Virus record (IMG/VR): IMGVR_UViG_3300046171_000231
Coordinates: 1-64,000 of that record
Length of the DNA: 64,000 bases
Strand: one strand, 5' to 3'
Position 1 is the stretch's first letter; the number at the start of each line of letters is the position of its first letter. Positions 1 to 19,776 of this stretch are shown piece by piece. Made by a program: the position numbers and the translations under genes. The notes under the pieces were generated by a model. That model was not told the origin of the DNA. It did no database searches and saw only the letters and a list, made by a program, of their open reading frames with translations.

Positions 1-69
1 GATAGAAAACCTTCGCCACTCCCCGAGCTCTGAAATAATAACTGTAACCTTCTGTAATATTTGGGATGG

Positions 70-129
70 ATCTTATCGCAATCCAGCTGCCCCGTCAACT
101 TAAGTTGTGCCACTTCGGATACTGTCCAC
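70..129 (-). promoter_or_regulatory. sigma70-type early promoter with upstream palindromic operator, firing off the left edge
   Basis: Minus strand TTGACG (93-98), 17 nt, TAAGAT (70-75); palindrome GTGCCACT-N6-ACTGTCCAC at 107-129. Confidence 0.6.
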
Positions 130-357
130 TGGCACCCCGTTCTCTAGCAATTTCGTGTTAGAATGGATGAACTCATCGGGAAAGAGGTTAATGCTCTTCG
201 CCCAATCAATCTTTTCGACCTTCAGGTCATCCCAACATTCTATGTCTAGCGTGACTGTGTACACACGCTTATGCATGATAATGTGTATCTCGAAGTGTAT
301 GTACATATGATAGCACACATCTAGATGACGTGTCAAGTATATGAGTATATGCACACA

Positions 358-538
358 TCTCGACTAGATGATATGATGTGCGGGTGTCTCGACTAGATTC
401 ATATTCACATACAGTATATGAGATAATGAATGATGATGAGAGTCTCGACTAGACTTATTATATGTGTGATATATCTCGACTAGCTTCTATGAGAATTATG
501 AGTATCTCGACTAGAAAATCTTATAAGTTCTCGACTAG
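358..538. repeat. Six exact direct repeats of TCTCGACTAG in a non-coding region
   Basis: Copies start at 358, 387, 443, 474, 505, 529. Confidence 0.95.
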
Positions 539-663
539 TTTTTATGTCAGGATTTCCAGAAATTTATGCCCGTGATGTTGACAAATCGCCCGTTCGATGC
601 TACGCTCGCTAAGTCCACAATACCCTAGCACATTACTTACAGATTCACTACACATTCTATATG

Positions 664-811
664 GATTCTATACAGATTCTCAAACGCAATAAATTACTGT
701 TTTATATTTAAAAAACCTTTTATTAATTAAAATCAAAGGTATTCTGTATCATTCAATACATTATAGAGGTATGCAAGAGTATTTTCTTTCCTGAGAGATT
801 CTATACAGATT
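664..811. repeat. 15-nt direct repeat GATTCTATACAGATT flanking an AT-rich tract
   Basis: Exact copies at 664-678 and 797-811. Confidence 0.8.
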
Positions 812-1135
812 ATAGGGGTAAAAACATTGATTTATTGTATCATTCTTGCTGTATATTGTATGACTTATATCACTTTACTCTACAATCTTATATACGCTCT
901 CATTCTCATCTTGCGACACTTAATTCTCTCTACATTCTACGACTCTTCGTGTGTGTTTATACCTTCGCTCTTACATCCCTTTAAAAATATCTACAGTTCA
1001 TCGAACAACCATAACAGAGTTATGTATAAGTCTTATGATTTAGGGGTAAAAAAAATCCGCTTGAACCCCTCGATAGACCACTCTATAAAATTCAGCGATT
1101 CTCTCTGATATGCGAGAGGGATAAACATAAAGGTC

Positions 1136-1456
1136 TTACTGTATATCTGCGTATCTACCTTCTTGCGAGTGATACATCTGAACATCTATACTATCTCTAC
1201 GATTTGTGATATACTCTAATTGATTCCAGTTATGATGATAGCATAGTAAGAGTACATGACTCTTCTTATGTAATGATGTTTTTGATTGTTCGGGTGGCAT
1301 ATCCCGAACTCCAAGTTCAATGGTTATATAATGGTCTGTCTGTGGGAAACCTTTTTTCTTTGGTGTGTAGTTGCATTTAAAATAAACCCAACCTTCGTGA
1401 ACCATACCGAGTGCTGTAGTCCACTTGACGTAATCATCGACTTGTGGTTCGTACAT
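1136..1456 (-). CDS. hypothetical phage protein (106 aa)
   Basis: ATG start, stop/start overlap with upstream ORF, phage-like composition. Confidence 0.75.
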   Translation of the reverse strand: MYEPQVDDYVKWTTALGMVHEGWVYFKCNYTPKKKGFPQTDHYITIELGVRDMPPEQSKTSLHKKSHVLLLCYHHNWNQLEYITNRRDSIDVQMYHSQEGRYADIQ

Positions 1457-1614
1457 TAATCGGGAATTGCTCTGAGTTCATCTGGGTTGACACCCTCATT
1501 CATTAATTCTTCTAATATTTTCTTTGCTCCATCTTTGGATAGTTTAAATGAAGTTTCGCTTACTAAACCCCATCCTGTAGTAAACTTTTGCTCAACTCTG
1601 TACTTGCGACTCAT
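1456..1614 (-). CDS. small hypothetical protein (52 aa, MSRKYRVEQKF...), missed by ORF track
   Basis: Read manually; TAATG overlap at 1454-1458. Confidence 0.7.
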   Translation of the reverse strand: MSRKYRVEQKFTTGWGLVSETSFKLSKDGAKKILEELMNEGVNPDELRAIPD

Positions 1615-1625
1615 TGTGTAACTCC

Positions 1626-1808
1626 TTAAGTAAATTCTGATAGGTAATAGTCATAAGAGACATTATGCAATTTTGCTTGACTCTTGTAGTATAGTTGTTT
1701 ATACTTGCGTGTAGATTCTCTTCTGAGATAATTCATTTCCTCTACGTCTGCGTGTTGCATAAACGACTTCAAAGTAGTTATAAAGGTTTTGATTTCATCA
1801 TCTGACAT
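1626..1808 (-). CDS. hypothetical early protein (60 aa)
   Basis: Tiles with neighbours on the minus strand. Confidence 0.7.
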   Translation of the reverse strand: MSDDEIKTFITTLKSFMQHADVEEMNYLRRESTRKYKQLYYKSQAKLHNVSYDYYLSEFT

Positions 1809-1839
1809 TGTAACTACTCTGTTTGTGCTGTATTATATA

Positions 1840-1983
1840 TCAGTTGGTTTGACCTCCACATTCACATACATCATCCAAGTTCTTTATCTTTTCAAGGATG
1901 CTGACAACAAGTGGATGAGTGTCTCCCATCAGGTAAAATTCAATCTTCCTTAACTCTTCCTTTGATAGATTAATAAGTGGCAT
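1840..1983 (-). CDS. small hypothetical protein (47 aa, MPLINLSKEE...), missed by ORF track
   Basis: Read manually; overlaps upstream stop at 1983. Confidence 0.65.
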   Translation of the reverse strand: MPLINLSKEELRKIEFYLMGDTHPLVVSILEKIKNLDDVCECGGQTN

Positions 1984-2150
1984 TAGTTCATTCCTGATAA
2001 TAGTTTAAGTGCTTGATTTTCCTGTGCCTGATAGATTTTGTTCTCTATCTGCTCAATCATATACCTTTCGTGGTCATCATTGTATTCAAAGTCTTGGACT
2101 ATGAATTTAAGAAACTCTAACTGTTCATTGTTGAATGTAATCTTTTCCAT
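1983..2150 (-). CDS. hypothetical early protein (MEKITF..., 55 aa)
   Basis: TAATG overlap at 2148-2152 supports start at 2150 rather than 2177. Confidence 0.7.
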   Translation of the reverse strand: MEKITFNNEQLEFLKFIVQDFEYNDDHERYMIEQIENKIYQAQENQALKLLSGMN

Positions 2151-2344
2151 TAGTCCTCTGTCTCCAATAATACCCACTTGTTTGCTTCCTCTAAAACAGA
2201 TTGAACATCAAGTAAGTCCTCATTCTCATTTAGAATGTCCGAGTCCTGATAATCTATTGATGATTCAACAAGTGATTCAACCTTTTCATTGACAAGTTCG
2301 TATAGAGTGTCGAACTGCTCTTCTGTAAAATAAACTTTTCTCAT
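2150..2344 (-). CDS. hypothetical acidic early protein (64 aa)
   Basis: ORF tiling. Confidence 0.75.
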   Translation of the reverse strand: MRKVYFTEEQFDTLYELVNEKVESLVESSIDYQDSDILNENEDLLDVQSVLEEANKWVLLETED

Positions 2345-2350
2345 TTGATT

Positions 2351-2818
2351 TTAGTGGATAATCTGGGGTCTAATTTGTCTGTGATGCCTAAGTCTTTCCA
2401 TTTTGTCCTTCATTCTCTCCTCTCGGAAATCATCAAGGTTATTAATGATAAGACTGATTCTTGCGTTTGCTTCCTTCAGTTCTTCATTACTGATAAAGAG
2501 TGAACTGTTCAGTAACTTCATTGTGATAAGTGCTGTTGGAACTGCGACTGCAACTCCTGTCAAAAATGATGTAATCATTACTCCCTCCAATTCTAATTCA
2601 AAGTCTTCTGCAACTGAAAGGAATGTACCTTCATCCCAAGACTTCATTTCTTCAAATGCACCTTCCTGACCATAAGTATCCTCTCCTTCCTGTATCATTT
2701 CGTGTATATGGTCAGATACAATACTTTTGAGTTCTTCAATGTCCATTATATCAACTGTCTCTTTGACAAATTTTCTTGCAAAGGTAACATAATCTTTGCT
2801 GTTAAGTTCTGATTTCAT
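2351..2818 (-). CDS. hypothetical protein, possibly two genes fused by an indel
   Basis: Acidic N-half then hydrophobic C-half starting at internal Met preceded by GGAG-TAATG. Confidence 0.65.
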   Translation of the reverse strand: MKSELNSKDYVTFARKFVKETVDIMDIEELKSIVSDHIHEMIQEGEDTYGQEGAFEEMKSWDEGTFLSVAEDFELELEGVMITSFLTGVAVAVPTALITMKLLNSSLFISNEELKEANARISLIINNLDDFREERMKDKMERLRHHRQIRPQIIH

Positions 2819-2820
2819 TT

Positions 2821-3021
2821 TTATGCTCCTTGATAGTAGTTAACTGGTTCTTCTTCAGTAACGCTAATCAGTTCGTGTCCTTCTGTGAAGTCAGATACAT
2901 CATAGTACTGATAGTTTCCATTTTGAAACTGTAGTCTTGCATCTTCTTCATTCTCTGCATAGATTTCGACATTTGCATAAGAGATAAATTTCTCTTCAAA
3001 GATAAATTTTGTTTTAGTCAT
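2821..3021 (-). CDS. hypothetical early protein (MTKTKFIFEE..., 66 aa)
   Basis: GGAG RBS upstream of ATG at 3021. Confidence 0.75.
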   Translation of the reverse strand: MTKTKFIFEEKFISYANVEIYAENEEDARLQFQNGNYQYYDVSDFTEGHELISVTEEEPVNYYQGA

Positions 3022-13812: not shown

Positions 13813-14775
13813 TTATATAATATCTAAGATGTTAATGCAAGTCTCTTGTGCCACTTCTTGAACTGGTTTATATTCTTGCACTCTCTTCTGAATTAAGTTA
13901 CCATAATCTTCGTGTAGTTCGCACCCAATATAATCTCTGCCAAGTGCCTTTGCGACTGCAGCTGTAGTTCCAGAACCCATAAAAGGGTCAAGTATTATAT
14001 CTCCTATCTCACTCCCTGCAAGTATGCAAGGTTCAATCAAGTCAGGTGGATATGTAGCAAAATGAGCTTCACGATATGGTTTATTTGTTACTGTCCAGAC
14101 AGAGCGTTTATTCTTTGTTGGATATGATTTTGTAAGTCCGCTATGTGGTTGGAGTCCTGTTCCTTCGTTGTGATATTTTCCATTTGTTCTGTCTCTTGTT
14201 CCCCAATCTTTTGCGGGTTCTTTGATTGCTTCATTATTGTAGTAATACTTTTTGTTTTTACTGAATAAAAATATATATTCGTGTGCCTTCGTACACCTGT
14301 CTCTCACACTTTCTGGCATTGGATTTGGTTTATGCCATATTATATCTTGACGTAAATGCCATCCATCATTTCTCATTGCAAATGCGAACATCCACGGAAT
14401 ACCTATCAAATCCTTTTCTTTAAGTCCTTCTAATTTATTTGCTCTCTTCGCACATTTATCTGGTAGGTCTTGTTTCGTTTTAGATACTGATTGTTTGACA
14501 AGTGCTTGACCTTTACCAGGTCGATAGTTATAGTAACTATCCCCAAGATTAACCCAACAAGTTCCATCATCAGTAAGAACATTTTTTACCTCTCGGAATA
14601 CTGATACTAATTGTTCAATAAATTCCTCTGGAGTTTGTTCCTGACCGATTTGTTTATCCTCTCCACCATAATCTCTAAGTCCATAATAAGGTGGGGATGT
14701 GATGCAAGTCCTTGCCTGTTCATCAAACTCTTTGAGTGTCTCACGACAATCTCCAAATAAAATTGTGTCTCTCAT
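13813..14775 (-). CDS. beta-class N4-cytosine/N6-adenine DNA methyltransferase
   Basis: TSPPY catalytic motif near N-terminus, DPFMGSGTT SAM motif near C-terminus. Confidence 0.92.
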   Translation of the reverse strand: MRDTILFGDCRETLKEFDEQARTCITSPPYYGLRDYGGEDKQIGQEQTPEEFIEQLVSVFREVKNVLTDDGTCWVNLGDSYYNYRPGKGQALVKQSVSKTKQDLPDKCAKRANKLEGLKEKDLIGIPWMFAFAMRNDGWHLRQDIIWHKPNPMPESVRDRCTKAHEYIFLFSKNKKYYYNNEAIKEPAKDWGTRDRTNGKYHNEGTGLQPHSGLTKSYPTKNKRSVWTVTNKPYREAHFATYPPDLIEPCILAGSEIGDIILDPFMGSGTTAAVAKALGRDYIGCELHEDYGNLIQKRVQEYKPVQEVAQETCINILDII

Positions 14776-18072: not shown

Positions 18073-18610
18073 TTACGGAGATATAGTTGAACTTAACTAT
18101 CAATTTGATGTACCATCTATCATAGATGAATTAAAGTCTGTTGATAAGTGGATAGATGGTTCTAATAATAAAAAAGGATTAACTCTTACTGGTAGTGTTG
18201 ATGACTTAGAATTGACACAAAGAAATGATAGTAGTATAAATGATAATCTTAAAAAATGTCCATCACTCCTTGATTTTTTTAAATTATGGAACAGCCTTGC
18301 TAAATGTCACGCAGTCAATATGAATAGTGGTAGTTTTTTTCGATTACATCGTGACGCATATAAAACAACCCAACAAATGAGAATATTCATACCACTTAAT
18401 AAAACAGAATTACACGAATTTGCATTTATATACGATAAGAATATAGTCGAACTCAAAGCTGGTAGAGCATACTTATTAAATACTAAAAAACAACACGGTT
18501 CATTTGCTATGGTTGATGACATTTATCATATTTTAATAGGAGTTTATATCAATCCTCACAACTTCAAAGTTGTTACAAATTTATTACCAAATTGCATAGA
18601 CCACGAATGA
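18041..18610 (+). CDS. Asp/Asn beta-hydroxylase-like cupin oxygenase
   Basis: LHRD...RIFIPL...GRAYLLNTKKQH pattern. Confidence 0.75.
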   Translation: MNDTYLTILNSYGDIVELNYQFDVPSIIDELKSVDKWIDGSNNKKGLTLTGSVDDLELTQRNDSSINDNLKKCPSLLDFFKLWNSLAKCHAVNMNSGSFFRLHRDAYKTTQQMRIFIPLNKTELHEFAFIYDKNIVELKAGRAYLLNTKKQHGSFAMVDDIYHILIGVYINPHNFKVVTNLLPNCIDHE

Positions 18611-19776
18611 AAATCTGTATTATTGGTGGTGGTACAACTGGTTGGTGGTGTGCATCATATATGCAGAAATTTCTTGATGCAGATATTACACTCATAGAAA
18701 GTGATGAGATTCCAATAAGTGGTGTTGGAGAATCAACTTTACCACAAATCAAAACATTTTTTGACGAGTTAGAAATACCTGAGAGTGAGTGGATGAAAGA
18801 ATGTAATGCGATTCATAAGTATGGAAATATAAAATATGATTGGAATCACATAGGTTCTAAACCCTTCTATACAACTTTTTGGCAGAATAATCCTAAAGGA
18901 TTATTTGATGAGTGGTATCAAGCATATCAAGATGGAACTTTACTGAAAGAAGACCACGTTGAATTATATAATAACGAATACATTGGTTATCACTTAGATG
19001 CAACCTTGATAAACAATTTTATGAGAAATTATTGTAAAGATGTTAAACATATTGTAGATACAATCACAGAATTACCACAAGGTTATGATTTATATGTTGA
19101 CGCTACTGGATTTGAAAGAAGATTTACAAAAGATAATGAAGAGATAGAATTAAATCATCATCTTGTGAATAGTGCGTGGGTATATTCTCTTGAATATGAT
19201 GGTATAAACCCATTTACAAAATCTATAGCAAGAACAAACGGGTGGCAATTTGAAATTGATTTACAAAATCGAACTGGAACGGGTTACGTTTTTAGTGATA
19301 AATTTACTAATGACGATGATGCACTTAAAGAATTAAAATCTTGGACTACTCGTAAAATTATTACTGAACCAAAATTAATTAAATGGAAACCTAGTGTATT
19401 AAAAAATGCTTGGAGTGATAATGTTGTTACAGTTGGTCTTGGTCAAGGATTTATTGACCCATTGGAATCAAACGGGTTATATATGGTTGTCTATAGTATA
19501 ACTCTCTTGGTGAAATGTATTTTAAAAGGTTCGTCACCTCAAGCATATAATCGAACTATGTCAAAAGTTCATCGAGATAATTCTAATTACATATTACACC
19601 ATTATATGCTCTCACAAAGAGATGATACTGATTTTTGGAAATACTATAAAAAGTTTGACGCAACAAAAACAGTATGGGATGAGTATTTAAAGAAAACAAA
19701 TGAATACACAAATCTATATCCCGATGCAATATGGGCTCAATTAGGATTATATTTCGATGCTCCTAAACCTTCGTAA
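18607..19776 (+). CDS. flavin-dependent tryptophan halogenase-like protein
   Basis: GGGTTG, GVGEST, conserved Lys in AIHKYG, YVDATG, GFIDPLES. Confidence 0.88.
   Translation: MKICIIGGGTTGWWCASYMQKFLDADITLIESDEIPISGVGESTLPQIKTFFDELEIPESEWMKECNAIHKYGNIKYDWNHIGSKPFYTTFWQNNPKGLFDEWYQAYQDGTLLKEDHVELYNNEYIGYHLDATLINNFMRNYCKDVKHIVDTITELPQGYDLYVDATGFERRFTKDNEEIELNHHLVNSAWVYSLEYDGINPFTKSIARTNGWQFEIDLQNRTGTGYVFSDKFTNDDDALKELKSWTTRKIITEPKLIKWKPSVLKNAWSDNVVTVGLGQGFIDPLESNGLYMVVYSITLLVKCILKGSSPQAYNRTMSKVHRDNSNYILHHYMLSQRDDTDFWKYYKKFDATKTVWDEYLKKTNEYTNLYPDAIWAQLGLYFDAPKPS

What the first reader, a model, noticed from the sequence alone, without database searches (positions are those of the whole stretch)
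288..900. Iteron-like TCTCGACTAG array next to an AT-rich tract: candidate origin or protein-binding array
Seen: six exact 10-mers with start-to-start spacing 29, 56, 31, 31, 24 (three near 3 helical turns). There are degenerate copies (TCTCGAAGTG at 288; GCACACATCTAGATG at ~313, which lacks CGACT), then an AT-rich stretch (~690-790) bracketed by a 15-nt direct repeat. No convincing gene over ~1.1 kb, unusual in this dense genome. The repeat contains TCGA and CTAG, possible methylation targets. Inference: replication origin, packaging or terminal region, or methylation-sensitive control element.
Basis: partly seen in the sequence, partly recalled or inferred. Interest (0 to 1): 0.6.

Follow-up and report, generated by a model that had tools for sequence, protein, structure and literature searches.

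The report
Cyanophage protein-binding array beside origin-like module
The repeated TCTCGACTAG words are six binding sites for an unidentified DNA-binding protein, set between two back-to-back early promoters of a large T4-like cyanophage, beside a conserved, unannotated module (promoter, 11-bp tandem repeats, very AT-rich tract) that looks like a replication origin.

Summary
Six exact TCTCGACTAG copies (358-538) are cores of a 13-bp dyad, ATCTCG-A-CTAGAT. The window is the start of a 235-kb T4-like cyanophage contig whose ends overlap by 610 bp, so nearness to the "end" is an assembly accident.

The array is conserved at the same place in over 80 related phage contigs and in P-SSM2, P-SSM5 and S-SRM01. 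Site number, spacing and orientation change between lineages, but the site persists. Sites are far better conserved than spacers. Tandem pairs are virtually absent from 185,579 prokaryote genomes. No CDS explains the array here.

The array fills the 245 bp between two divergent sigma-70-type promoters. The rightward promoter has no gene. It reads into 11-bp tandem repeats and then one of the least stable AT-rich tracts of the genome. In 9 of 67 related loci those repeats are perfect cyanobacterial DnaA boxes.

Best reading: an operator-type array for an unidentified dimeric regulator that controls the two promoters, one of which feeds an origin-like module. Classical iteron, pac-site and coding explanations fit worse. 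The binder, the transcripts and origin activity are all unproven. I rate it a new variant of a known kind, of moderately high interest.

The parts
100..276 (-). Small early gene (58 aa, P0003; family M..TVTLDIEC(W/Y)DDL..DW) read leftward away from the array.
   Evidence: Conserved at the same position in 15 loci. It matches phrog_12516, of unknown function. The protein is acidic and the AlphaFold model shows no DNA-binding fold.
284..300 (.). Invariant TGTATCTCGAAGTGTAT, a half-site (ATCTCG) in the first transcribed bases of the leftward promoter.
   Evidence: All 17 columns are invariant in the 8 loci of this lineage. ATCTCGAAG variants recur next to the rightward promoter in other lineages.
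307..336 (-). Leftward promoter P_L: TTGACA (336-331), 18-nt spacer, TG, TATCAT (312-307).
   Evidence: It matches 11 of 12 consensus positions with an extended -10, and lies 31 nt upstream of the ATG at 276.
313..325 (.). Decayed site (ATCT-AGAT, 5 bp deleted) inside the spacer of P_L.
   Evidence: It is a full site in L022, L027, L029 and L035. Intact-site variants appear as loose ends at position 322 in runs X15 and X1.
357..369 (+). Dyad site 1, ATCTCGACTAGAT.
386..398 (+). Dyad site 2, GTCTCGACTAGAT.
442..454 (+). Dyad site 3, GTCTCGACTAGAC.
473..485 (+). Dyad site 4, ATCTCGACTAGCT. This site is absent in L018 and L020.
504..516 (+). Dyad site 5, ATCTCGACTAGAA.
528..540 (+). Dyad site 6, TTCTCGACTAGTT. 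This proximal site lies at a fixed distance (-70 to -72 nt) from the -10 element of P_R in nearly all relatives.
541..577 (+). Conserved block upstream of P_R, containing TTTTTATGTC and the palindrome-containing stretch GATTTCCAGAAATTT (551-565).
   Evidence: It aligns at 79% identity with AG-345-F15 and is conserved across loci.
578..606 (+). Rightward promoter P_R: TTGACA (578-583), 17-nt spacer, TGc, TACGCT (601-606). The expected start is about 611-613. No gene lies downstream on this strand.
   Evidence: The hexamers and their spacing are invariant while the spacer sequence varies in 27 loci. The same architecture is present in anchor-less lineages and in S-SRM01. No conserved + strand ORF follows it.
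601..620 (+). The 20-mer TACGCTCGCTAAGTCCACAA (-10 element plus first transcribed bases). TAGTCCACA/TAAGTCCACA resembles a DnaA box (7 of 9 positions).
   Evidence: An exact match is present in 26 IMG/VR contigs. The DnaA-box likeness is by inspection only.
638..683 (+). Tandem 11-nt direct repeats, consensus TACAGATTCTA, about 3.9 copies. They occupy the position where some relatives carry DnaA boxes.
   Evidence: TRF gives period 11. TACAGATT-like units start at 638, 649 and 671. Repeats at this position are enriched over controls: 29 of 36 loci against 26% of control segments.
664..678 (+). Left copy of the 15-nt direct repeat GATTCTATACAGATT.
   Evidence: family D10.
688..790 (.). AT-rich block, a candidate DNA-unwinding element, containing the conserved TTTTATATTTA..AAAACCTT core.
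   Evidence: Minimum GC is 0.16. Its 40-100-nt windows rank in the least stable 0.04-0.17% of the genome. The block is conserved across lineages.
745..760 (.). TGTA-N8-TACA, which matches the consensus of the cyanobacterial NtcA box.
   Evidence: GTA-N8-TAC is kept in nearly all relatives. The NtcA consensus is from my own knowledge, and binding was not tested.
797..811 (+). Right copy of the 15-nt direct repeat GATTCTATACAGATT.
   Evidence: family D10.
1136..1456 (-). Right-hand flanking gene (106 aa, P0002, phrog_522), the last gene of the leftward operon that ends at the module.
   Evidence: Conserved in 17 loci and equivalent to PSSM2_096. The model is an SH3-like barrel (pLDDT 80) with no significant PDB match, best E 0.13.

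Best explanation
The six TCTCGACTAG words are cores of a 13-bp dyad (ATCTCG-A-CTAGAT; half-site ATCT[C/A]G). I take this dyad to be the specific binding site of a dimeric DNA-binding protein that has not been identified. It is probably phage-encoded.

The array fills the 245 bp between two divergent early sigma-70-type promoters. P_L drives small early genes leftward. P_R drives an untranslated transcript rightward into 11-bp tandem repeats and then an extremely AT-rich tract.

Proposed mechanism, all of it inferred: once the protein accumulates, it occupies the mostly helically phased sites cooperatively. It thereby sets the activity of both promoters, and of a second early promoter 1.75 kb away that carries an inverted pair of the same site. 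The P_R arm is most likely the transcriptional trigger of a replication origin of the T4 kind (promoter plus downstream unwinding element), so the array would time both early transcription and origin firing.

What is shown: the sites, their conservation, their positions relative to the promoter elements, and the architecture of the module. What is inferred: protein binding, promoter activity and any origin function.
For: Sites as the selected unit:
- In the 8 closest relatives, site columns are 89% identical against 62% for spacers, and whole site-plus-spacer units are gained or lost.
- Between the two overlapping contig ends, copies 1-5 are identical and 6 of the 16 differences fall in a single spacer.
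- In 26 contigs sharing the 20-mer anchor, and in P-SSM2, P-SSM5, AG-345-F15 and S-SRM01, 4-8 sites always lie 60-370 nt from the same promoter and almost none lie in 5-12 kb of flanks.
- Orientation is all forward, all reverse or mixed, depending on lineage. Other lineages use the near-perfect palindrome ATCTCG-W-CGAGAT. The matrix from 354 sites is A-T-C-T-C-G-W-C-K-A-G-A-T.
- Spacings cluster at 24, 31-32, 40-42, 51 and 62-64.
- Tandem pairs occur in 64 viral contigs but in only 2 of about 32 million prokaryotic contigs, neither cyanobacterial.

Operator-like placement:
- A full site lies in the P_L spacer in relatives.
- The own-genome inverted pair at 233732/233762 abuts a TGcTATAAT extended -10 at roughly the -35 position.
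- Relatives have 2-3 clusters per early region, each just upstream of an early gene.

Origin-like arm:
- The P_R hexamers and their spacing are invariant while the spacer varies, and most loci have no downstream gene on that strand.
- Tandem repeats follow P_R in 29 of 36 loci against 26% of control segments. Periods are 10-11, 20-22 and 31-33 nt.
- In 9 of 67 non-redundant loci these repeats are exact TTTTCCACA: 20 copies near the array against 2 in the remaining flanks, directly abutting the AT block. TTTTCCACA is the cyanobacterial DnaA box (PMC4674748).
- The AT block is among the 20-30 least stable stretches of the genome.
- T4 oriF/oriG consist of a promoter plus an AT-rich unwinding element, and oriE has short direct repeats plus an early promoter (PMC3016281).
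Against: - No binding protein was found. The flanking small proteins are acidic or uninformative, and the genome has no RHH_1, HTH_3 or Rep_3 match.
- No transcription start site or strand-resolved RNA evidence exists. The RNA-library contigs covering 65-685 but not 700-1600 are only suggestive and could include DNA.
- The -10 element of P_R (TACGCT) is weak apart from its TG extension.
- This phage has no DnaA box at the locus. The DnaA evidence comes from 13% of related loci and is carried over to this phage by position only.
- GC skew is uninformative because nearly all genes lie on one strand.
- In P-SSM2 the site occurs only at the array, so a regulon is not universal.
- T4 origins are redundant and need no dedicated site-specific protein.
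- In some relatives a homing-endonuclease gene follows the AT block, so P_R may simply be its promoter there.
Confidence: 0.5

Rival explanations
1. Classical iteron origin. The TCTCGACTAG copies are iterons bound by a phage initiator that directly melts the nearby AT-rich tract, as in pSC101, R6K, P1 oriR or lambda ori.
For: The array is a single dominant locus per genome. An AT-rich tract of extreme instability lies within 150 nt. DnaA boxes lie at the same locus in 9 of 67 relatives. A site overlaps the promoter of the adjacent gene, as Rep operators do. T4 oriE also has repeats of unknown role.
Against: The sites are 13-bp dyads, not 17-22-bp asymmetric repeats. Spacings of 24-64 are irregular, and orientation flips between lineages. 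A promoter and a conserved block separate the array from the AT tract, whereas a different set of 11-bp tandem repeats sits right at the tract. There is no Rep_3 match, and the neighbouring genes encode tiny acidic proteins. Relatives carry extra clusters of the site on other early promoters.
Confidence: 0.17
2. Purely transcriptional control region. The array is an operator or enhancer set for early promoters and the locus has no role in replication. The AT block and tandem repeats would then be promoter-associated or terminator elements, host-factor (NtcA, DnaA as a transcription factor) sites, or a homing-endonuclease landing pad.
For: Sites lie on or next to promoter elements at several loci. 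An NtcA-like box is conserved. GIY-YIG or HNH genes follow the AT block in some relatives. A T4-type late-promoter word (TATAAATA on the minus strand) lies in the AT block of many lineages, seen by inspection.
Against: P_R has no gene in most loci, yet its hexamers are invariant. Helically phased direct repeats, and perfect DnaA boxes abutting an AT-rich tract, are the hallmark layout of origins.
Confidence: 0.2
3. By-product or relic of coding sequence. The repeats reflect a repeated peptide (D-L-D-E) of the small acidic protein encoded over the array in relatives, and have no function at the DNA level here.
For: In palindromic-site lineages 2-4 sites lie in frame inside a conserved acidic ORF (MYDDY..LDExY..LAYxHYA; equivalent to PSSM2_098), spaced 24 and 36 nt apart.
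Against: In this lineage that ORF is degenerate and frame-shifted among close relatives. The six sites are spaced 29, 56, 31, 31 and 24, which puts them in different frames. In L016 all sites lie upstream of the ORF. Sites occur in both orientations and at other promoters. Sites remain under stronger constraint than spacers.
Confidence: 0.04
4. Packaging (pac) or terminal-repeat signal, possibly gated by methylation as in P1 pac.
For: The array lies 350 bp from the contig start. Contigs of relatives often end nearby: 7 of 17 whole contigs end 100-280 nt beyond the anchor. The motif contains TCGA and CTAG, and the phage has two DNA methyltransferases.
Against: The contig ends overlap by 610 bp at 97.4% identity, so the 'end' is an assembly wrap-round. 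T4-like phages package by headful without a fixed end (own knowledge). The terminase gene is about 45 kb away. There is no GATC in the array. The contig breaks fall in the hypervariable repeat and endonuclease-insertion zone, not in the array.
Confidence: 0.03
5. RNA-level element. The dyads act as short hairpins or protein-binding sites in leader RNAs rather than in DNA.
For: Secondary clusters lie 25-45 nt upstream of start codons in short intergenic spaces with no obvious promoter. RNA-library contigs cover the array. A conserved rightward promoter just before the window start could transcribe across it.
Against: The stems would be only 4-5 bp. Orientation relative to transcription varies. 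Rfam finds nothing. In this phage the array lies upstream of both mapped promoter-like elements.
Confidence: 0.05

Closest known systems
Bacteriophage T4 origins oriF/oriG and oriE (PMC3016281)
   Same: The phage lineage is T4-like. A promoter reads into an A+T-rich unwinding element within about 100 bp, as at oriF/oriG. Short direct repeats occur together with an early-mode promoter, and the repeats recur at syntenic places in relatives, as at oriE. The locus sits at a local reversal of transcription direction.
   Different: The promoter is a sigma-70 early type with a -35 element, not MotA-dependent. An upstream array of 13-bp dyads has no T4 counterpart. Host DnaA boxes occur in some relatives, whereas T4 is DnaA-independent (own knowledge). 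There is no sequence similarity or synteny with T4 origins, and no functional data.
Iteron plasmid and phage origins with an autoregulated neighbour (pSC101, R6K gamma, P1 oriR)
   Same: The order is repeated protein sites, then DnaA boxes (in relatives), then an AT-rich tract. One site overlaps the promoter of the adjacent gene.
   Different: The sites are dyads of 13 bp with irregular spacing and variable orientation. There is no Rep gene. A promoter lies between the array and the AT tract. The repeats nearest the AT tract are a different, lineage-specific family.
Multi-site operator arrays of small dimeric repressors (omega repressor heptad arrays of pSM19035; ParR-parC; lambda OR/OL). Comparison from own knowledge.
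   Same: Several short sites in direct or inverted orientation lie between or upstream of promoters. Cooperative, face-of-helix spacing is expected, and the same site is reused at a few promoters.
   Different: No cognate regulator gene has been identified. The sites are spaced 24-64 bp apart rather than contiguous. The genome is a lytic T4-like phage with no partition or lysogeny module.
Cyanobacterial oriC (DnaA boxes TTTTCCACA next to an AT-rich region; PMC4674748)
   Same: Relatives carry 2-4 perfect boxes spaced 11 or 21 bp apart, abutting the AT block. The two-box arrangement 11 nt apart matches the Cyanothece oriC oligo shown in that paper.
   Different: It lies in a phage. This window has no perfect box, only TAGTCCACA-like and TACAGATT repeats. 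The boxes are preceded by a strong outward promoter and the dyad array.

Membership tests
Iteron-type (Rep-iteron) replication origin | Several asymmetric direct repeats of about 17-22 bp, in one orientation, at regular spacing of about two helical turns. | tested here: not met
   The sites are 13-bp dyads. Spacings are 29, 56, 31, 31 and 24 here and 17-80 in relatives. Orientation is forward, reverse or mixed depending on lineage.
Iteron-type (Rep-iteron) replication origin | An adjacent gene for the initiator that binds the repeats. | tested here: not met
   There is no Rep_3 match in the genome. The neighbours are 58-aa and 106-aa proteins with no DNA-binding fold or annotation. A novel initiator cannot be excluded.
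Iteron-type (Rep-iteron) replication origin | AT-rich unwinding region and DnaA boxes beside the repeats. | tested here: inconclusive
   The AT block at 688-790 is in the least stable 0.04-0.17% of the genome, but it lies 150 nt from the array beyond a promoter. Perfect DnaA boxes occur in 9 of 67 related loci and not in this phage.
T4 oriF/oriG-type origin (promoter plus downstream unwinding element) | A promoter whose transcript enters an A+T-rich unwinding element within about 100 bp. | tested here: met
   P_R (578-606) has hexamers and spacing conserved in all lineages. The AT block begins about 80 nt after the -10 element. This is a sequence-level test only.
T4 oriF/oriG-type origin (promoter plus downstream unwinding element) | The promoter is MotA-dependent middle-mode, with a MotA box at -30. 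| tested here: not met
   P_R has a canonical TTGACA -35 element and an extended -10 element, not a MotA box.
T4 oriF/oriG-type origin (promoter plus downstream unwinding element) | A persistent R-loop that primes leading-strand synthesis, and autonomous replication of a plasmid carrying the element in infected cells. | not testable with these tools
   This needs R-loop mapping or plasmid replication assays.
T4 oriE-type origin | A cluster of evenly spaced short direct repeats with an early-mode promoter, recurring at syntenic sites in relatives. | tested here: inconclusive
   The 11-nt tandem repeats at 638-683 and the early-type P_R fit, and repeats recur in 29 of 36 loci. The TCTCGACTAG array itself is not evenly spaced. 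The role of the T4 iterons is itself undefined.
T4 oriE-type origin | Homology or synteny with T4 oriE and the repEA/repEB genes. | not tested
   No profile for RepEA/RepEB was at hand. The flanking genes are early-region ORFans, not baseplate genes.
Operator array of a dimeric transcription regulator | Dyad-symmetric sites of conserved sequence. | tested here: met
   The matrix from 354 sites is ATCTCG-W-CKAGAT, and most lineages carry a near-perfect palindrome.
Operator array of a dimeric transcription regulator | Sites overlap or abut core promoter elements at one or more promoters. | tested here: met
   A full site lies in the P_L spacer in L022, L027, L029 and L035. The own-genome pair abuts TGcTATAAT. 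Secondary clusters lie upstream of early genes in relatives. Promoters are predicted, not mapped.
Operator array of a dimeric transcription regulator | A cognate regulator is identified. | tested here: not met
   No candidate emerged from the Pfam or PHROG scans, the two structure predictions, or the RHH_1 and HTH_3 genome searches.
pac site or terminal repeat signal | It lies in or next to the terminase genes and marks a physical DNA end. | tested here: not met
   The terminase gene lies at about 189.5-190.1 kb. The contig ends overlap, indicating a circular map. Read ends could not be examined because only contigs were available.
Repeat generated by a coding sequence | A conserved ORF spans the copies in one frame. 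| tested here: not met
   The spacings are not multiples of 3. No conserved ORF crosses 358-540 in this lineage. The criterion is partly met in other lineages, where an acidic ORF covers 2-4 sites.

The most novel reading that the evidence does not exclude
The module is the main early replication origin of the large T4-like cyanophages (the P-SSM2 / S-SRM01 group). It would be a hybrid of a T4-style transcript-primed origin and a plasmid-style origin. An early promoter fires into lineage-specific initiator boxes, which in some lineages are the host's own DnaA boxes, so that host DnaA is recruited by a T4-like phage. Beyond the boxes lies an unwinding element. A novel phage protein bound to the 13-bp dyad array would switch that promoter and its divergent early neighbour, coupling the early-gene programme to origin firing in phages that lack MotA and AsiA.
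Probability: 0.3. Interest if true: 0.8.

Novelty: new variant of a known kind. Interest (0 to 1): 0.62.

Why it matters
T4-like cyanophages are among the most abundant viruses of the ocean's main primary producers. Their replication origins, and the way they time early transcription without the T4 MotA/AsiA system, are not known.

This work defines a conserved module of about 0.5-0.9 kb. It is unannotated in the model phage P-SSM2 and in S-SRM01, and it is widespread in seawater, occurring in runs from 14 studies. It has a precise site (ATCTCG-W-CKAGAT), two promoters, phased tandem repeats and an unwinding-type tract.

Perfect host DnaA boxes in some lineages would, if functional, mean that a T4-like phage uses the host initiator. 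That would be unexpected.

Both questions become directly testable in culturable phage-host pairs. The locus is also a hot spot for homing endonucleases and for assembly breaks, which matters when interpreting metagenomic cyanophage contigs.

Tried and rejected
- Megablast of window 1-3000 against phage records gave no hit. The 'distant' mode gave only one short hit, which opened the comparative route.
- GC skew falls monotonically across the genome because nearly all genes lie on the minus strand, so it is uninformative for an origin.
- No tRNAs were found, and Rfam at E<=1 over 1-3000 found nothing.
- A conserved RNA fold for the second conserved block was tested with alifold and not found (-3.3 kcal/mol).
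- The coding explanation was examined in detail and rejected for this lineage.
- The search for the binder was negative. Pfam and PHROG scans of eight small neighbours found nothing informative. P0001 has a transmembrane helix. AlphaFold models of P0002 and P0003 showed no DNA-binding fold, and the Foldseek PDB search had a best E of 0.13. The genome has no RHH_1, HTH_3 or Rep_3 match.
- The host-regulon idea is not supported. Tandem palindromic pairs are essentially absent from 185,579 prokaryote genomes. Single sites in host genomes were not searched.
- Public reads gave only Logan contigs, with no strand, ends or depth profile, so that evidence is inconclusive.
- GANTC enrichment in the tandem repeats is only in the top 1% of windows, so it was dropped.
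- Literature searches for a cyanophage origin, iterons or non-coding RNA at this locus found nothing relevant.
It was redone from stored ids and nothing was lost (before).
- Complex prediction was not used, because no protein-protein claim is made.
Full report
**1. The observation**

The six exact TCTCGACTAG copies start at 358, 387, 443, 474, 505 and 529 on the + strand, spaced 29, 56, 31, 31 and 24. About 0.1 exact copies of a 10-mer are expected in 64 kb on both strands. No other exact copy exists in the window, and looser matches elsewhere are at chance level (31 found, 30.2 expected). The 15-nt direct repeat (664-678 and 797-811), an inverted repeat (687-703 and 821-837) and the AT-rich tract (GC 0.255 over 701-900) are also present. 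The gene-free stretch is 277-1135, because the ORF at 276..100(-) is a conserved small gene.

**2. Context**

The window is the first 64 kb of a 235,761-bp virus record. Bases 1-610 repeat at 235152-235761 with 97.4% identity. The contig therefore runs once round a circular or circularly permuted map and continues into a population variant. The array is single-copy, and its position near the "end" carries no meaning.

Tail, baseplate and fibre proteins identify a T4-like myovirus. The nearest named relatives are cyanophages P-SSM2, S-SRM01, P-SSM5 and S-SKS1, at about 48-52% protein identity. Nearly all genes lie on the minus strand, so cumulative GC skew falls monotonically and gives no information about an origin. 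The flanks are typical early regions: many small ORFs, each behind a strong sigma-70-like promoter, and an ArdA-like anti-restriction gene.

**3. What the repeat is**

With its flanks, the repeat is a 13-bp dyad, ATCTCG-A-CTAGAT. One distant DNA hit (Marine virus AG-345-F15, genus Salacisavirus) showed the same site in both orientations, followed by an ~85-nt conserved block. A 20-mer from that block (TACGCTCGCTWAGTCCACAA) retrieved 26 viral contigs.

In every one of those contigs, 4-8 sites cluster 60-370 nt to one side of the 20-mer, and almost none occur in 5-12 kb of flanking DNA. P-SSM2, P-SSM5 and S-SRM01 have the same arrangement, unannotated. Most lineages use the near-perfect palindrome ATCTCG-W-CGAGAT. 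The window's lineage uses one CGAG-type and one CTAG-type half.

A matrix from 354 non-redundant sites reads A-T-C-T-C-G-W-C-K-A-G-A-T. Centre-to-centre spacings peak at 24, 31-32, 40-42, 51 and 62-64. Apart from the 24-bp minimum these lie near multiples of 10.5 bp.

Within the window's own lineage, site columns are 89% identical against 62% for spacers, and whole site-plus-spacer units come and go. Two palindromic sites within 8-38 nt occur in 64 viral contigs but in only 2 of about 32 million contigs from 185,579 prokaryotic species, neither of them cyanobacterial. The site is thus a phage element under selection as DNA, and its symmetry points to a dimeric protein.

**4. Is it explained by a CDS?**

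In lineages with palindromic sites, a small acidic ORF (42-64 aa; MYDDY..LDExY..LAYxHYA; equivalent to PSSM2_098) overlaps the left part of the array. There 2-4 sites lie in frame as D-L-D-E. That ORF looks real in those lineages.

In the window's lineage it is degenerate and frame-shifted among close relatives. The six sites fall in different frames (the spacings modulo 3 are 2, 2, 1, 1, 0). In L016 all sites lie upstream of the ORF. Sites occur in both orientations and at other loci. The coding explanation therefore fails here.

**5. Anatomy in the window**

The array fills the 245 bp between two divergent promoters.
- P_L is TTGACA(336-331)-N18-TG-TATCAT(312-307), matching 11 of 12 consensus positions. 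It drives the 58-aa gene at 276..100.
- P_R is TTGACA(578-583)-N17-TGc-TACGCT(601-606). Its hexamers and spacing are invariant in all lineages while the spacer sequence varies, which is the signature of a promoter.

The "degenerate" copy at 313-325 lies in the P_L spacer. It is a full site in four relatives and in variants of this phage in public runs, and here it has lost 5 bp. The copy at 288 belongs to an invariant 17-mer at the start of the P_L transcript. The site nearest P_R keeps a fixed distance from it (-70 to -72 from the -10 element) in nearly all loci.

Genome-wide, the site occurs only at the array and as an inverted pair at 233732/233762. There it abuts the TGcTATAAT element of another early promoter, and the pair is conserved in relatives. 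Other lineages have two or three clusters per early region, each just upstream of an early gene. P-SSM2 has only the array. These placements are what one expects of operators.

**6. The neighbouring module**

P_R has no gene downstream on its strand in 25 of 36 loci, including this window. It reads into direct tandem repeats and then into a conserved AT-rich block.

Repeats are found within 200 nt of P_R in 29 of 36 non-redundant loci, and 17 of those have at least 2.5 copies. The corresponding rates in 721 control segments are 26% and 6%. Periods are 10-11 (16 loci), 20-22 and 31-33 nt, whereas control periods peak at 7-9 and 12 nt. Unit sequences differ by lineage. The window has TACAGATTCTA, period 11, 3.9 copies, at 638-683.

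In 9 of 67 loci the units are exact TTTTCCACA, in sets of 2-4 spaced 11 or 21 bp apart and directly abutting the AT block. There are 20 copies within 500 nt of arrays against 2 in all remaining flanks; the reversed control word gives 1 against 5. TTTTCCACA is the cyanobacterial DnaA box (PMC4674748).

The window's AT block (688-790) falls to 16% GC. Its windows rank in the least stable 0.04-0.17% of the genome. A TGTA-N8-TACA word (745-760), which matches the NtcA-box consensus from my own knowledge, follows and is conserved.

This layout matches published T4 origins. oriF and oriG consist of a promoter plus an A+T-rich unwinding element. oriE has short direct repeats plus an early promoter, and the role of those repeats is unknown (PMC3016281). 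The DnaA boxes in some relatives are an addition to that scheme.

**7. What could not be shown**

No binding protein was identified. The neighbours are acidic or uninformative, and the two structure models and several family searches were negative.

Public runs show the phage in seawater samples from 14 studies, including RNA libraries, but only as contigs. One metatranscriptome has contigs over 65-685 and none over 700-1600, while a DNA run covers everything. That is suggestive, but it is not strand-resolved and DNA carry-over cannot be excluded.

The methylation idea is untested. The phage encodes a D12-class and an N6/N4-class methyltransferase. GATC is depleted genome-wide and absent from the array. 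CTAG and TCGA are enriched in the array only because they are part of the site.

**8. Verdict**

The array is a set of specific protein-binding sites (about 0.9 probability). Its best-supported role is an operator-type array that controls the two divergent early promoters, together with one further promoter in this genome. One of those promoters is the transcriptional arm of a conserved origin-like module.

I give about 0.5 to this combined reading and about 0.4-0.5 to the module being an origin at all. A classical Rep-iteron reading of the array gets about 0.17, a purely transcriptional reading about 0.2, and the coding-relic, pac-site and RNA-level readings a few percent each.

I found no description of this element in the literature searched. 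I rate it a new variant of a known kind.

Noticed in passing
window 1-610 and G000 235152-235761: The contig's two ends overlap by 610 bp at 97.4% identity (14 mismatches and 2 indels). The record labelled 'linear' is therefore a wrapped circular or circularly permuted map joined through a strain variant.
   Followed up: yes
L014:6343-6483(-), L011:12810-12956(-) and others (alignment A3); P-SSM2 PSSM2_098; S-SRM01 L100 ~1647-1780(-): A family of small, very acidic Tyr/Asp-rich proteins (42-64 aa, MYDDY..LDExY..LAYxHYA) is encoded over the left part of the array in most lineages. It is unannotated in S-SRM01 and degenerate in the window's lineage. Its function is unknown; a DNA mimic is one possibility.
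   Followed up: partly
window 1-60 and L009 10090-10200 (just before the window start on the circular map): A second conserved non-coding block occurs in 18 of 29 loci. It is a + strand TTGnnn-N17-TATAAT promoter followed by ATAACAA..GG..ACTG..CCTTCGyCACTCCCC. Its transcript would run rightward, antisense to the 58-aa gene and into the array. No conserved RNA fold was found.
   Followed up: partly
L040:7080-8096(+), L065:11372-11908(+), L067:10675-11196(+), L089:4950-5672(+); S-SRM01 gp171: GIY-YIG (or, in S-SRM01, HNH) homing-endonuclease genes sit immediately after the AT block in some relatives. In addition, 7 of 17 whole contigs end 100-280 nt beyond the 20-mer anchor. The locus is hypervariable and a hot spot for assembly breaks.
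   Followed up: partly
window 745-760: TGTA-N8-TACA, which matches the consensus of the cyanobacterial nitrogen regulator NtcA's binding site (own knowledge). GTA-N8-TAC is conserved at this position in nearly all relatives.
   Followed up: no
window 800-1135: A further ~330 nt of non-coding, pyrimidine-rich (+ strand) sequence is conserved only in the closest relatives (L018, L027). It contains TAGGGGTAAAAA twice (813 and 1041) and has no conserved ORF.
   Followed up: no
L009 9120-9180 and 9660-9720 (G000 ~234120-234720): Repeated early-promoter cassettes (AAACTGTCyAC..TTGCAT-N16-TATAAT) lie in front of successive small genes. They are reminiscent of the mobile promoter cassettes described in T4-type phages (own knowledge).
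   Followed up: no
G000 189474-190080(-): The large-terminase N-terminal domain match is split over two adjacent open frames (187 aa and 375 aa). This could be a frameshift, an intervening element or an assembly error.
   Followed up: no
whole genome; window 13813-14775(-); G000 155861-156586(-): CTCGAG is absent from the genome (0 observed, about 8 expected) and GATC is at 0.45 of expectation. The phage encodes an N6/N4-class and a D12 (Dam-class) DNA methyltransferase but no C5 enzyme.
   Followed up: partly
window 18592-19776(+): A tryptophan-halogenase-like gene (phrog_2928, E 1.6e-83) is one of the few genes on the + strand.
   Followed up: no
L014, L016, L043, L089, S-SRM01 (L100 2030-2075): Several lineages without DnaA boxes carry inverted copies of TTATTGAGAAT / ATTCTCAATAA between the tandem repeats and the AT block. 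This may be another lineage-specific protein site.
   Followed up: no
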